Shown: positions 25,001 through 30,815 of the stretch, one piece after another
Numbering within the stretch: the stretch's first letter is position 1
Layout: every line of letters begins with the position of its first letter
Origin: Guillardia theta CCMP2712
Taxonomy: Eukaryota > Protista > Cryptophyta
Length of the DNA: 56,556 nucleotides
Assembly (NCBI RefSeq): GCF_000315625.1
Contig: NW_005434529.1
Coordinates: 1-56,556, forward strand
Reading direction: 5' to 3'
Program-made: the position numbers and the translations under genes
Notes under the pieces: generated by a model
The model's database searches: none
What the model saw: the letters and a program-made list of their open reading frames with translations, nothing else
Told to the model about the DNA's origin: nothing

Positions 25001-25194
25001 CGCTGGTGCCGAAGTTTTCTTTCTCGTTTCAGGCGAGAAAGGCTTATTGTCCTCTCAAGCTGTTAATAGTCTTGCAGGACGTGGGAAGAAAGTTTGCCGA
25101 CGGTGCGAGGTTCTACGTGGAGGGCAGCAAGCTGCTGGGAACGGACGTGCAGTACGCCGTCCGACTGATCATCAAGGTGCCCTCCCTCCTCCTC

Positions 25195-25227
<33 letters not shown>

Positions 25228-26473
25228 CTTCTCCTCCTCATCATCATCCTCATCCTTATCCTTATCCTACTCCTCCTTCTTCTCCTCCTCCCCCTCATCC
25301 TCCTCCGCTTTCTCCTCCTCCTCATCCTACTCCTCTTCTTCTCCTCCTCCTCTTCCTGCCGAGCCCGTCTAATGGGGAGCTTGTAGGCCGCGCTCGGAGA
25401 CACCCTCCAGCCAAGAGAGGTGCTCAATCCTCGTCCCCCTCCATTCTCTCCTCCTACTCTTGACACTCATCAACACGTGTCCGTCCCTCCTGAACTTATC
25501 CTGCTCCTTCCTCGTTCTCGCCCGCTATTGCTCTCTCCTCCCTCTCTCGTTGTCCCACCTCATCTTCTGCTCTGCATCCTTTCCCTTTCTTCACAACTTC
25601 GCAGGTCCGCACTCTCAGGAGAACAGCAAAGGACCTCATCACTTTCATCCCCTTCATCATCATCCTTCTTATTCCCCTCAGGTTTTCTTCTGACTCCTCT
25701 CAGTCACCTTCTCCGTCTCATCCTCCCTTCCTCGCAGCCCCGTCGGCCATGTCCTTGTATTCTCCTTCATCCAGGTAATCTTTATCCTGCTCTTTCTCCT
25801 TCCCCTCCTCCTCCTTCTGCTTGTCCTCCTCTCCATCTCTCCCTCCCTCCCTCCCTCCGACCTCCTTACCAACGCAAAAATACAGCGCTTCTTCCCGGAT
25901 TTCTTCCCCACCCCCTACACCGATCGCCGTCAGGTACTTCCAACTGGTGGCTACTCGACTCTGACGAGCAGCGCAGAACCTCATGAGGATTTACCAATCC
26001 GTTGAGCTTGTCATGCCGGACACCAGCAGCGGCAAGCCCAGCAACCGCATCTCCTCCTCTACCGTCCGCAGGAATCGGGGAGGAACCACCACGCAGGTTG
26101 TGTAGAGGGGGGTAGGACTGAGGGAGATGAAGGGAGGTCAGGGGGTAGGACTGAGGGAGATGAAGGGAGGTCAGGGGGTAGGACTGAGGGAGATGAAGGG
26201 AGGTCAGGGGGTAGGACTGAGGGAGATGAAGGGAGGTCAGGGGGTAGGACTGAGGGAGATGAAGGGAGGTCAGGGGGTAGGACTGAGGGAGATGAAGGGA
26301 GGAAAGGGGGTAGGACTGAGGGAGATGAAGGGAGGAAAGGGGGTAGGACTGAGGGACTCGGATGAAGGGAGGTCAGGGGGTAGGACTGAGGGACTCGGAT
26401 GAAGGGAGGTCAGGGGGTAGGAGATGCTGACGATCCAGTCTGGCAGATGCGACGAGAGCGAATGAAGAGATAA
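22043..26473 (+). CDS. Plastid-targeted LETM1-like protein
   Basis: Signal peptide ending VNS-FVV (Phe at +1). Spliced C-terminus FYVEGSKLLGTDVQYA...LQPRE|VRTLRRTAKDLITFIPFIIILLIP..PVGHVLVFSFIQ...FFPDFFP is typical of LETM1-like proteins. Confidence 0.75.
26107..26421 (+). repeat. 33-bp G-rich intronic minisatellite (GGGGGTAGGACTGAGGGAGATGAAGGGAGGTCA), ~9 copies
   Basis: Direct tandem copies inside the last LETM1-like intron. Confidence 0.92.
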
Positions 26474-27320
26474 ACTTCTAGTTACTGACTTAAGTATTCA
26501 TTCGACTGTCTGTGCCCCGTATCCCGCCGGCCGATGGTTATCCCAAACAATAAATGATGATCCACCCGGTCACGTGATTAGATGATCGCCGGAGCCACTG
26601 TCGGTGTAAGGTCAAGAGTCTGACAGTGGCTCGGGGCCGGGCCCCGGGGGTCCGATCTTATCCGATCAACTCAGTTCTTTAGAGTAAAAGTTGAGTGAAA
26701 GACTCAGGTGGATGGATTATTAGCACCTCTGTAGGACCCTGAGTCATAGCTGTTGCCATAGGAAATTTTTGATCCTAAAAGTAAGTTTTAAGAGCACTAT
26801 ACACTAAATTCTATAAGTCTTTGTAAGAAGCCCCAGGTGGGCCCAGGAGGTCCCCGGGGGTAATAATGCTTGCGAGGGTGAAGGACGGGTGGAGAGGCTC
26901 GACCAAGGAGGGGTGTCTACTCCATTTGTGTCTCGTTTCAGGAGCTGAGGTGGGTAGGTCTGAAGTGCCAGCTGAGGGTGGAGGTGGTGCATCGAAGTTG
27001 AATGTGAGGGAGTAAAGGGGCGGGGAGGGTCCCATAGAGTGAAAAGTAGTAGGGTAGTGGACGTCTACGGGGGTAGTTTGGTAGGTACGTTCTACACGGG
27101 TCCAGTTGAAGTCCCACAGCCTTGGGGGGTATATCCGTGTAGACAAGGGTTGCTACGAGGGGGTAGGGTGGCAAAGGCGGACCAAGAAAATGGAGGTAAA
27201 AATGGAGTAAAGGGTAGAAAAATATAAAATGTTTTTGAAATTTCACTTACAAACTTACTTTATAAAATATTCTAGGAATAATAACACTAATAAAACTCCC
27301 CATCCTCGTCCCCCCCGTCC

Positions 27321-28499
27321 ATGCACTCCCGTTCGACTTCAGGGCTTTCTTGTGTGGAGGAGTGCGAGGACGTTCAGCTGTCCTCTGACTCCTCCTGCAA
27401 GGATCCCACCCCTCATGGTGAAGTGGTATCGACCGAGGGGGAAGAAGTTGACACGGGAGGGGAGGGGATCATAGGCCTTGTTCAGGGAAGTCTTTCTCCT
27501 GTTCAAGGCCCGTTTGGGAAGGATTACTTGGTTGAGTATGGGGAGATGGTATCAACGGGCTGCGAAGCCCTGACATTCTCCCAATATCAACCATTCTCAA
27601 ACAACCAAGTCGTCGATGAGGATGGGCTTGTTGCTCCAGTGGGGAAATACAACCTTGAGGTGCAACATTCTCCCCTACCTTTTTTCGGCGAGCGTGGAAA
27701 TATGCTTGATGGAATCGTACATTCTTCTGGCGAACAGACTCAGACGGCAAAAGGCGATGCTTCTTCTCCAACATCATTTTGTCCTCGTTGTCCATACGAT
27801 GACATGACGCCAGAGTTGCAAGCGCTTTTCTCTTCATCCCGAAGGACGTCTTCTCCCTTGGATGCATTTGTGAGATCCGATGACGAAGAGAGTGAGAGAG
27901 TGAATTTTCCGGATGAGGAACGGATAGAGAAAGAAAATCAGCGGACCAGGGAGATCTCAACTTACGATCCTGAGTCTCCTCCTCTTTCTTCTTTTCAGTC
28001 TGCTTCTCCTCTTCCTTTGTCAGCTCCTGATGTCCATGAGGCGGTCTCCTTGTCGTTCGAGGAACATGTTTTCGAGTATGTGAGCAGGAACGCGGGTGAC
28101 GCGGTGACCAACCTGAAGAAAAAGTCTGTGAGGCGCATCATCGAGGTCAAGAAGCTGTTTGAAAGGCTCGTTCAAGAGAAAGTCATTAAATGCTCCGGCA
28201 TTGATGCAAGTATCTTCGGCTTTCAGGAGCTGCAAGTCTCTGATCTAGCGCGCTTCGTTGAGGCAGCGACTTTGATGGTGAAGAACAATGATGGCGGATG
28301 CTGGCGCGGCAACGGTGTGACAATCACGTACTGGGCTTGGCCTGTGTACGATCTTCTGCGAATGTGTGGCATCGCCCCTGCTCGTCATCATTGCAGAAAA
28401 TCTGCGAAACCGTTCAAGGCTCGTTGTTTGAACTTCGAGTCATGGAACTTCGACATGTCCCGTTTGAAGAGCAACTGCCATCGACTCAACAAAGGATGA
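27321..28499 (+). CDS. Intronless 392-aa protein; acidic S/P-rich N-terminus and an unannotated C-terminal domain (paralog of 29038-29799)
   Basis: Long clean ORF. Its C-terminal ~140 aa align by eye with the neighbouring ORF. Confidence 0.8.
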   Translation: MHSRSTSGLSCVEECEDVQLSSDSSCKDPTPHGEVVSTEGEEVDTGGEGIIGLVQGSLSPVQGPFGKDYLVEYGEMVSTGCEALTFSQYQPFSNNQVVDEDGLVAPVGKYNLEVQHSPLPFFGERGNMLDGIVHSSGEQTQTAKGDASSPTSFCPRCPYDDMTPELQALFSSSRRTSSPLDAFVRSDDEESERVNFPDEERIEKENQRTREISTYDPESPPLSSFQSASPLPLSAPDVHEAVSLSFEEHVFEYVSRNAGDAVTNLKKKSVRRIIEVKKLFERLVQEKVIKCSGIDASIFGFQELQVSDLARFVEAATLMVKNNDGGCWRGNGVTITYWAWPVYDLLRMCGIAPARHHCRKSAKPFKARCLNFESWNFDMSRLKSNCHRLNKG

Positions 28500-29037
28500 A
28501 TGGATCGATATCCAGCAGTTTACAAGCATACTTTCTACAGGCTCTTTCATGAGTTTTGGTAATCTTCTGTGCCTGGATCGGCTTTGATCAGGAAAAAATA
28601 CCAAAAAAATGATACATAAGCTTTGAGAAAATCCCCCAAACAAATGGTAAGTATGCGTCGGATGGTGTGCGTGTGCAATTCCGATAGCTAATAATTATAA
28701 TAAATCAAAAAACAACCCAAAACCTCTAAGCTGAAGCTTTATGACTCCTCCCACGCGAGATTGCTTCCAAGAGTCTCAGCCAAACGCTTCATTAGTTTCA
28801 TATACCGAGGATAAGTACATTCCTTCCTCGTTAGATGCTTACCCTTCTGCAGTTCATGCGCTGACAGGAACGAGTTATCAGGCAGAAGAACAACATTTGA
28901 GTTTTCATGTTCAAAGGAATGGTGGATCGAACTTCAATTCTTCATGTTAATTCAATTCTGATTGAGTGTTACGTTCAGCAACAACGCCTGCCGTCATTGA
29001 CAGAACGATTGCTATTCTCATGCTATGTAAACGTCAC

Positions 29038-29799
29038 TCAAGATTGTGAAAGAGACCGTTGAGAAAACAGAAGACGGCAGTTGCACTTCACCTTGTTCTC
29101 TCTGAACACATACTTTGTCAAACTTGTGTCTGCGTCAATATTCTTCATCAAAGCGCACTGGCGAAGGAGCTCACGCGTCGCCTTCATCGGCCTTTTCAAT
29201 CTTGAAAATGGCATTCCTGGTCTCCACGCTTGCACATCCCCAAATGTTGTCATGTAATCGTCGAACTTTTCTTGGTCCAGCACTAGCATGGAGCTAAAGC
29301 CGAGGATGGAGCGCGCGCCGTTGGAGCAGAGCTTGACAACGCGATCCTGCTCCCACTCTCTGACTTTCTGATGCATGCAAGAGAGGCGATGAAGTTTCTC
29401 GTCGGTCAAGTCTTCAATTCTCTTCGACATGAGAGTAGTGCGATGAACCTGGAGAAACTCCATGATGTCTCGAAGGGCTCTCTGCTCCTCAGACGTCAGC
29501 GCCCGCTCTGCATCGTGTGTCGACCAAACTTTATTTGCTTTCTGCTCAAGACGTAAAATCTCTGCTGGCATTGCCAGGCTCGCAGTCGCCAAGTGCAACT
29601 TGTCTGCGGCATGAAGAGGACAACTTTGCTGGACAAGCGGTTTCGACTGTTGAAGCACATTGTTCAGATTATGGAGAAGGAAGAGCTGAGGGTCTTGGCG
29701 AACTTCTTCACGCTGTTGAGGTGGAGGAGAGGAGGAGGAGAAGGGACTCCATACCCTCTCCTCCTCGGACTGCCAAGCGGACTCCAAGTCCACCTCCAT
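29038..29799 (-). CDS. Intronless 253-aa protein sharing the unannotated C-terminal domain
   Basis: QDRVVKLCSNGARSILGFSSMLVLDQEKF matches QEKVIKCSGIDASIFGFQELQVSDLARF of the neighbour. Confidence 0.8.
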   Translation of the reverse strand: MEVDLESAWQSEEERVWSPFSSSSPPPQQREEVRQDPQLFLLHNLNNVLQQSKPLVQQSCPLHAADKLHLATASLAMPAEILRLEQKANKVWSTHDAERALTSEEQRALRDIMEFLQVHRTTLMSKRIEDLTDEKLHRLSCMHQKVREWEQDRVVKLCSNGARSILGFSSMLVLDQEKFDDYMTTFGDVQAWRPGMPFSRLKRPMKATRELLRQCALMKNIDADTSLTKYVFRENKVKCNCRLLFSQRSLSQS

Positions 29800-29819
29800 A
29801 TCAGCTCGCTGGTTGCGAT

Positions 29820-30815
29820 GCTGTGGCCCGAGCTCGCCTCAGCCGCGAGCTAGCCAGGAACTCTGTGTTTCTTTTTACTGCGGAGTGGGTTCAAAGTTAA
29901 GTTAAAAATCAGCCTGTACGAGGATAATCCGATCGGACTGAGTCAGCCTGACCGGGCCGCCCGGCCGCGGGGGCCTCAGCCTGCGTCGGACTCCGAGGCT
30001 CAGTCGGGAGACTTGACCCTGCAAACGCATCATGGCATGAAGACCTCATGCGTTTGCAACTTCATCACTGACCTGACTCAGCGGCACGTCATCGGAGGAT
30101 GCCGCATCACGCGCCTGCTGCTTCAGTGCACGGCACGGTTTGCCGCCCGAGCCAGGTCCCGGCGGAATCTCGGCGTTTCAGTATGCTACTCAGTTTTTCT
30201 TCTCAGGCTCAAATCGGAGTTAAGTTAAATTAATACTTCGCTGTCTGACGGATCATCCGATGGCACGGGCCGGGCCGGATCATCGGATCGGACTCGCAGT
30301 CGGGATCGCCGCCGGGATCGGACAGACTCGCCAGGCCCCGCGGCCACGCCGGGCGGCGGGCCGTCACCGTCACGCGGCACCAGGCCCGAGGTCCGCCGGG
30401 CGCGGCGGCCGGCCGGGCTGCCTTGATCGGAGTAGCCTAAGTCGGATGCCGGGGCAACTAATGGCTTCACCGAGGCTACTTCAAGTTGCGGCTCAGTGAC
30501 TTGCCACTCAGCTGAGGCTCGAAGTCCCCAAGTTCAGTGCCACGCCGCGGCCGGGTGAGACGCACCGTACCGCGGCGGCGGCGACGGTGATCGACCGTGC
30601 CACCGCGGTTCAACGGTTCAACGGTTGAACTTGCTTCGCGGCCAGTCATCAGTAGTGATTGGCAGCCATTCCTGTCCGAGAGAGCTACGGTAGGACGGCA
30701 CTTAGACTCGGTGACTCGCGAAGATCGGAAGACTGAGATACTTTACAAGGCGGGCCATGCTCGGACCTAGTACCGGCGCGGTGACAGTGCCAAGTTGCGG
30801 CTGAGTCAACACCTG
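29820..30815. other. Intergenic GC-rich palindromic word block
   Basis: Words include CCGGCCG, GATCATCSGAT, CGGTTCAACGGTTCAACGGTT, CTCCGAGGCTCAG and TTAAGTTAA. Confidence 0.6.

What the first reader, a model, noticed from the sequence alone, without database searches (positions are those of the whole stretch)
27321..29799. Convergent intronless paralogs define an unannotated domain patterned like a divergent HSF winged helix (candidate new transcription-factor family)
Seen: the C-terminal ~130-140 aa align in order. QEKVIKCSGIDA-SIFGFQELQVSDLARF / QDRVVKLCSNGARSILGFSSMLVLDQEKF; CWRG / AWRP; VYDLLRMCGI / TRELLRQCAL; WNFDMSRLKSNCHRL / YVFRENKVKCNCRLL. The N-termini are unrelated, acidic and S/P/Q-rich, like activation regions. 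Known: the HSF DNA-binding domain runs ..SFHVFDQGQF..SFVRQLNMYGFRK..EF.H..F.RG...LL. The motifs S.LV.DQ..F, LL.MCG and W/Y.F occur here in the same order with comparable spacing, but the SFVRQLN recognition helix is not conserved. Inference: a lineage-specific HSF-derived DNA-binding family with new specificity. It could speculatively read the intergenic words that flank both genes.
Basis: partly seen in the sequence, partly recalled or inferred. Interest (0 to 1): 0.8.

Follow-up and report, generated by a model that had tools for sequence, protein, structure and literature searches.

The report
New winged-helix protein family in cryptophytes
Two tail-to-tail genes of the alga Guillardia theta are divergent members of an uncharacterised family of over 200 proteins whose shared end domain is predicted to fold like the DNA-gripping domain of HSF, ETS and IRF gene switches, so they are probably a new kind of transcription factor, though descent from HSF is not shown.

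Summary
ORF A (27321-28499 +, 392 aa) and ORF B (29038-29799 -, 253 aa) are convergent, with 538 bp between their stops. They share a basic C-terminal domain of about 140 aa behind unrelated acidic N-termini. Pairwise similarity is weak (E 6e-4). A profile built without either gene still finds both (A 4.5e-28, B 5.6e-10).

They are not an isolated pair. Guillardia theta has about 17 such genes, and 223 relatives turned up among 1.84 billion representative proteins. The named ones come only from Guillardia and Hanusia; the rest are unlabelled metagenome proteins. There is no Pfam family and no PDB sequence match.

HSF membership fails on sequence: no Pfam hit, hhalign probability 0.9%, and 17 of 150 permuted controls scored as high.

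Best reading: a new winged-helix family, probably DNA-binding transcription factors. B is a fast-evolving outlier.

The scan noted a probable member of the same family elsewhere in this genome (s1-446970).

The parts
27321..28499 (+). Gene A: single-ORF gene of 392 aa, annotated as a hypothetical protein
   Evidence: ORF. The exact protein is held by NCBI, UniRef and eukprot. It has a full-length collinear ortholog in the Hanusia phi transcriptome, P0039: 34% identity, E 8e-59.
27321..28064 (+). Gene A N-terminal region (aa 1-248): acidic and S/P/Q/T-rich, probably disordered
   Evidence: Over aa 1-250: pI 4.24, net charge -30, S+P+Q+T 32%. The ESM Atlas model of the whole protein has pLDDT 0.36. 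Only 31% identical to the Hanusia ortholog, against 49% in the domain.
28065..28496 (+). Gene A C-terminal domain (aa 249-392): predicted winged helix
28338..28364 (+). Gene A helix 3 (WPVYDLLRM, aa 340-348): candidate recognition helix
   Evidence: Model helix 92-100. It holds the family's most conserved exposed residues: Y95 in 87% of members and R99 in 95%, followed by G102 in 96%. Coordinates checked.
28500..29037 (.). 538-bp spacer between the two stop codons (the convergent 3' ends)
29038..29799 (-). Gene B: single ORF of 253 aa; the annotated model starts at Met77 and has 177 aa
   Evidence: ORF. The annotated protein P0031 equals aa 77-253. No relative outside Guillardia theta was found by the word-indexed search, which covers proteins of 0.55-1.75 times B's length. 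It is the longest branch in the family tree.
29041..29454 (-). Gene B C-terminal domain (aa 116-253): a divergent copy of the same domain
29158..29190 (-). Gene B helix 3 (PMKATRELLRQ, aa 204-214)
   Evidence: Model helix 89-99. It keeps R99 but replaces three conserved positions: Y95 with R, T91 with M and G102 with A.

Best explanation
Genes A and B are two diverged members of a previously undescribed protein family. It has about 17 genes in Guillardia theta, orthologs in Hanusia phi, and about 200 unlabelled metagenome proteins. The family's defining domain is about 140 aa long, basic and usually C-terminal. It is predicted to fold as a winged helix-turn-helix of the HSF/ETS/IRF type. The core is H1, a b1-b2 hairpin, H2, H3 and a b3-b4 wing. 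Three elements are added: an N-terminal helix, an 18-residue conserved loop between H2 and H3, and a C-terminal helix. The most likely function (inferred, not shown) is sequence-specific DNA binding. Helix 3 would lie in the major groove, presenting the conserved exposed Tyr, Arg and Gln/Lys. The basic wing and C-terminal helix would contact the backbone. The unrelated acidic, low-complexity N-termini would act as effector or activation regions. Some members carry two copies of the domain and could read bipartite sites. Gene A is conserved with Hanusia and is probably functional. Gene B has lost several conserved helix-3 and wing residues, so it either has a new specificity or is decaying.
Confidence: 0.6

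Rival explanations
1. The family is a highly diverged offshoot of the heat-shock factor DNA-binding domain. It would have kept the fold and the Arg-Gln of the recognition helix and acquired a new specificity.
Confidence: 0.2
2. The domain is a winged-helix-like module that does not bind DNA in a sequence-specific way. It could be a protein-protein, RNA-binding or chromatin or replication adaptor domain. On this view the resemblance to ETS, HSF and IRF is only a common arrangement of helices and strands.
Against: The top of both lists is occupied almost exclusively by sequence-specific DNA-binding domains of a single topological subclass. The domain is strongly basic, helix 3 has a conserved exposed face, and it is paired with acidic low-complexity regions. 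These features are typical of transcription factors.
Confidence: 0.17
3. The genes are remnants of a viral or mobile element, such as a giant-virus or polinton-like insertion, and not host regulators.
For: Several metagenome relatives lie on gene-dense contigs of 20-150 kb that are rich in orphan genes. These contigs carry heliorhodopsin, ankyrin, RING, LRR and exonuclease genes, a content seen in large DNA viruses.
Against: No relative was found in 2.9 million IMG/VR viral contigs with three queries, nor in the BFVD viral structure library. The same contigs carry eukaryote-type genes: F-box, RCC1, and an Ephrin_rec_like/CUB/F5_F8 protein. The window's surroundings are ordinary nuclear genes with typical GC content. 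The Guillardia paralogs are dispersed, some contain introns, and several have one-to-one Hanusia orthologs.
Confidence: 0.03

Closest known systems
HSF DNA-binding domain (Pfam PF00447; structures 1fbq, 5d5u, 7dci, 5d8l)
   Different: No detectable sequence homology. Helix 3 is about one turn shorter and reads VYELLRQIGV, not SFVRQLNxYGF. An 18-residue conserved loop (W..NG...LK.PT) is inserted between H2 and H3. There are extra N- and C-terminal helices. The domain is C-terminal, with no HR-A/B trimerisation region after it.
ETS domain (PF00178; for example ETV1 4avp, ETV4 4uuv, FEV 2ypr, ELF2 9igj)
   Different: 6-13% identity. No Pfam hit. The LWQFLLELL and R..R..YYY signatures are absent. 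ETS domains are regarded as a metazoan family (general knowledge).
IRF and vIRF DNA-binding domains (KSHV K11 4p55, IRF4 9toy, IRF3 and IRF7 2o61)
   Different: No sequence similarity. The tryptophan pentad spacing was not tested. The long loop here lies between H2 and H3.
Other DNA-binding winged helices (TcpK 5vfx, DpnI C-terminal domain 4esj, IBP39 1pp8)
   Different: These are bacterial or parabasalid proteins with no sequence relation. They rank lower and their hits are fewer.

Membership tests
HSF (HSF_DNA-bind, PF00447) | Match to the Pfam HSF_DNA-bind model at or near the gathering score | tested here: not met
   No HSF hit for A or B at E up to 10, for the 10 paralogs, or for 115 family domains at E up to 1. 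The same model finds about six true HSF genes in this genome.
HSF (HSF_DNA-bind, PF00447) | Profile-profile homology to HSF domains | tested here: not met
   hhalign of A2 against the HSF alignment A3 gives probability 0.9% and P 0.059. After G. theta HSF exon fragments were added as separate rows, the score was 13.8, against 10.8 +/- 2.1 for permuted profiles; 17 of 150 permutations scored at least as high.
HSF (HSF_DNA-bind, PF00447) | Recognition-helix signature SF(V/I)RQLNxYGF | tested here: not met
   The family consensus is VYELLRQIGV. A has VYDLLRMCGI and B has TRELLRQCAL. Only the Arg-Gln pair and the hydrophobic pattern coincide.
HSF (HSF_DNA-bind, PF00447) | H1-b1-b2-H2-H3-b3-b4 fold superposable on solved HSF domains | tested here: inconclusive
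HSF (HSF_DNA-bind, PF00447) | N-terminal DNA-binding domain followed by an HR-A/B coiled-coil oligomerisation region | tested here: not met
   In A and B the domain runs to the C-terminus: aa 249-392 of 392 and aa 116-253 of 253. Most relatives also have it C-terminal.
ETS (PF00178) and IRF (PF00605) | Match to the family's Pfam model | tested here: not met
Winged helix-turn-helix fold class (HSF/ETS/IRF topology) | Three-helix core with a b-hairpin between H1 and H2 and a b3-b4 wing after H3 | tested here: met
   DSSP on both AF2 models, pLDDT 91 and 85. ETS, HSF and IRF domains dominate the top ranks of a search of 48,161 chains for both models. These are predictions, not experimental structures.
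Sequence-specific transcription factor | Binds specific DNA and is nuclear | not testable with these tools
   Only indirect support: a basic domain, acidic N-termini and a conserved exposed face on helix 3.
CG-1 (CAMTA DNA-binding domain, PF03859) | Match to the Pfam model and a compatible fold | tested here: not met
   One of 115 members hits at E 8e-4. None of ten members with the WKK.NGK motif hits. BLAST against the G. theta CG-1 exon pieces finds nothing below E 0.85. The CAMTA domain is reported to model as a NAC-like beta scaffold (bioRxiv 10.1101/2022.11.22.517060), unlike the models here.

The most novel reading that the evidence does not exclude
This is a fourth, protist-borne lineage of the HSF/ETS/IRF-type winged-helix DNA-binding fold. 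It has expanded in cryptophytes and in an unidentified group of aquatic microbes or large viruses, and it includes tandem two-domain forms. It would act as a family of sequence-specific regulators. It might descend from HSF and so show how this fold class radiated outside animals.
Probability: 0.3. Interest if true: 0.7.

Novelty: new variant of a known kind. Interest (0 to 1): 0.55.

Why it matters
Catalogues of transcription factors for cryptophytes and other secondary algae rest on Pfam domains, so they miss this family. With about 17 genes it would be one of the larger candidate regulator families in Guillardia theta. If DNA binding is confirmed, it adds a new sequence family to the HSF/ETS/IRF fold class, two of whose three families are regarded as animal-specific. 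It would also give a handle on gene regulation in an alga that is a model for secondary endosymbiosis. The many unlabelled metagenome members show the family is ecologically widespread yet unstudied.

Tried and rejected
1. Pfam scans of A, B, 10 paralogs, 115 domains and 10 long relatives found no consistent family.

2. PDB sequence searches with two profiles gave only chance-level hits.

3. The CG-1 lead was rejected. It rested on one hit at 8e-4 and a WKK.NGK motif.

4. The two ESM Atlas searches gave only sub-threshold leads. These were plasmid Rep winged-helix proteins, with scores of 0.84 or less.

5. I looked for a viral origin. BFVD gave nothing.

6. I asked whether the gene-dense metagenome contigs belong to the freshwater cryptomonad Tyrannomonas. 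This is unlikely, because that genome is reported to lack heliorhodopsins (PMC12747079). Their origin is unresolved.

7. The search for homologous proteins with A's domain returned nothing, because A is clustered under a 55-aa representative.

It was rerun with the fragments cut from the loci by coordinate.

HSF and CG-1 exon pieces were used only as separate pieces.

11. A and B as a recent inverted duplication was rejected. They are not sisters in the tree: A pairs with Hanusia P0039 (support 98) and B is an isolated long branch. This is a quick tree and B's position is unsure.

Full report
**What is there.** The window is from Guillardia theta CCMP2712: the assembly is 87 Mb, and protein names confirm the species. 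ORF A (27321-28499, +) encodes 392 aa. ORF B (29038-29799, -) encodes 253 aa. Both end in TGA and the stops are 538 bp apart, so the genes are tail to tail. The 392-aa product of A is already in NCBI, UniRef and eukprot. The annotated product of B (P0031, 177 aa) starts at Met77 of the same ORF. Neighbouring ORFs are ordinary nuclear genes: Laminin_G/Sushi, TPR, ankyrin, and a DEAD-box exon. GC content is typical of the genome.

**Is the similarity real?** BLASTP of A against B gives only 31% identity over 71 aa, E 6e-4. Searching the genome with A's last 138 aa found eight other long open frames with the same domain. A profile of ten paralog domains (A1) then found 22 matching stretches, which amount to about 17 genes:
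- one gene on contig C154 carries two copies of the domain;
- there is a tandem pair on C264;
- three copies (C108, C4, C51) are split by an intron next to helix 3.

The same profile found 223 proteins at E up to 1e-3 among 1.84 billion representatives, 43 of them below 1e-30. To avoid circularity I rebuilt the profile from 113 domains without A or B. It scores A at 4.5e-28 and B at 5.6e-10, with Z set to 25,000. They correspond to conserved family positions: LGF, V58, W80, R99, (W/Y)xF and N..RL.

**Who has it.**
- I looked up the source clusters of 29 non-window hits. The only named organisms are Guillardia theta and its relative Hanusia phi. Two further names are MAG labels (a Promethearchaeia archaeon and a Proteobacteria bacterium) that I take to be mis-binned contigs. 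The rest are unlabelled metagenome proteins.
- A has a full-length ortholog in the Hanusia transcriptome (P0039, 34% identity, E 8e-59). It is collinear from Met1, which supports the intron-less model. The domain is 49% identical and the N-terminus 31%.
- B has no relative outside G. theta among proteins of comparable length in the word-indexed search of 5.8 billion clusters.
- In a quick maximum-likelihood tree the Guillardia paralogs are interleaved with Hanusia and metagenome sequences, so the family diversified before those lineages split. A pairs with P0039 (support 98). B is the longest branch (2.19) and is not A's sister.
- Some metagenome members lie on gene-dense contigs of 20-150 kb with heliorhodopsin, ankyrin, RING, F-box and Ephrin_rec_like genes. 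No relative was found in IMG/VR or BFVD. The origin of these contigs is open.

**What fold.** No Pfam family matches and no PDB sequence matches.

AlphaFold2 with a 115-sequence alignment gave a confident model of A's domain: pLDDT 91.2, pTM 0.86. Its elements are helix 2-13, H1 19-37, b1 41-44, b2 55-58, H2 61-73, a long loop, H3 92-100, b3 103-105, a wing loop, b4 126-129 and helix 131-141. B's domain gave the same order at pLDDT 84.8. The two models share one alignment, so their agreement is not independent.

An exhaustive alignment to 48,161 PDB representatives gave these top rows:

|---|---|---|
| A | ETV1, ELF2, FEV 4.8; vIRF-K11 4.7; HSF1 4.3; HSF2 4.2; IRF4 4.1 | 37 |
| B | vIRF-K11 4.9; HSF1 4.8; ELF2 4.4; HSF2 4.3 | 63 |

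- the explicit order of helices and strands;
- near-complete coverage of the small target domains;
- the concentration of one topological subclass at the top of both lists.

**Is it an HSF?** On sequence, no.
- The Pfam HSF model finds about six true HSF genes in this genome but none of the 115 family domains.
- I built an HSF profile from the G. theta HSF on C202 and eight relatives. hhalign of the family against it gives probability 0.9% and P 0.059.
- I added further G. theta HSF exon fragments as separate, unjoined rows. The score was then 13.8, against 10.8 +/- 2.1 for column-permuted profiles. 17 of 150 permutations reached it, and a reversed profile scored 12.6.
- A greedy alignment is collinear and pairs ELLRQ with SFIRQ and the two wing motifs. 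That is suggestive but has no statistical weight.
- The domain's position also differs from HSF. It lies at the C-terminus with no HR-A/B region after it.

ETS and IRF fit the models about as well as HSF. I therefore file this as a new family within the fold class and give HSF descent about 20%.

**How it probably works (inferred).**
- The domain is basic throughout the family: median pI 9.4, 97% of members above 8. The net positive charge is concentrated from helix 3 to the C-terminus. The N-termini of A and B are acidic (pI 4.2 and 5.0) and rich in S, P, Q and T.
- In helix 3, V94, L97, L98 and I101 form the buried face. The exposed positions Y95 (87%), E96, R99 (95%) and Q/K100 are highly conserved, as are T91 before the helix and G102-x-x-P105 after it. 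This is the pattern expected of a recognition helix.
- Further conserved basic residues lie in the wing and the C-terminal helix: K88, K104, R111 and R140.
- The likely mechanism is major-groove reading by helix 3 with backbone contacts from the wing. The variable N-termini would serve as effector regions.
- A keeps most key residues. B replaces Y95, T91 and G102 and lacks the RGP..DPGK wing motif, so its specificity or function may have changed or been lost.

**Leads that failed.**
- A single CG-1 hit (E 8e-4 in 1 of 115 members) was not reproduced. The CAMTA domain is reported to model as a NAC-like beta scaffold (bioRxiv 10.1101/2022.11.22.517060).
- ESM Atlas searches gave nothing above noise.
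Those words are the subject of another note (s1-450935).
- An earlier first-reader note on another piece of this genome, 'tandem duplicated domain resembling a highly divergent HSF winged helix' (s1-446970, 1823 letters), probably describes the two-domain C154 gene, which I saw independently.

**Verdict.**
The domain is real, Pfam-less and predicted to be a winged helix of the HSF/ETS/IRF type. HSF derivation is unproven, and the two genes are only divergent members of a much larger family.
- Novelty: a new sequence family within a known fold class.
- Interest is moderate, 0.55.

Noticed in passing
L041 (JGI 3300021959 contig, 100 kb), L045/L046, L047: Metagenome relatives of the family sit on gene-dense contigs rich in orphan genes (GC 49-62%). 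These carry heliorhodopsin genes close by, along with ankyrin, RING, LRR, F-box, RCC1 and Ephrin_rec_like/CUB genes. On L041 and L047 two family members lie on the same strand, directly adjacent on L041 and about 3.6 kb apart on L047. They could be compact protist genomes or large DNA viruses. They were not found in IMG/VR.
   Followed up: partly
G000:C154:47203-48894 (L009/L016/L020): One G. theta gene (GUITHDRAFT_119680, 766 aa) carries two copies of the domain. They belong to the two deepest clades of the family tree. The same N-type plus C-type pairing recurs in metagenome proteins P0003, P0006, P0043 and P0050, so the tandem architecture is old.
   Followed up: partly
window 26108-26422: A 33-bp tandem repeat of 9.3 copies, 97% matching, lies about 900 bp upstream of gene A. 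It reads as a repeated MKGGQGVGLRE peptide in one frame. CCT-rich simple repeats lie at 25185-25357.
   Followed up: no
window 26480-27320 and 29800-30300: Both 5' flanks hold GC-rich palindromic words, such as GGCCCCGGGGGTCCGATC and CCGATCGGATTATCC, followed by an AT-rich stretch before the start codon. This is the subject of another first-reader note (s1-450935). I did not analyse it.
   Followed up: no
G000:C264:8080-10662 and C392:4227-4598: Two tandem family genes lie on C264. A near-identical copy of one of them lies on C392 (tree branch lengths 0.08 and 0.002). This may be a recent duplication or an allelic or assembly duplicate.
   Followed up: no
G000:C21:251077-251797 (L042-L044): G. 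theta has a CAMTA-type CG-1 domain gene split into at least three short exons.
   Followed up: no
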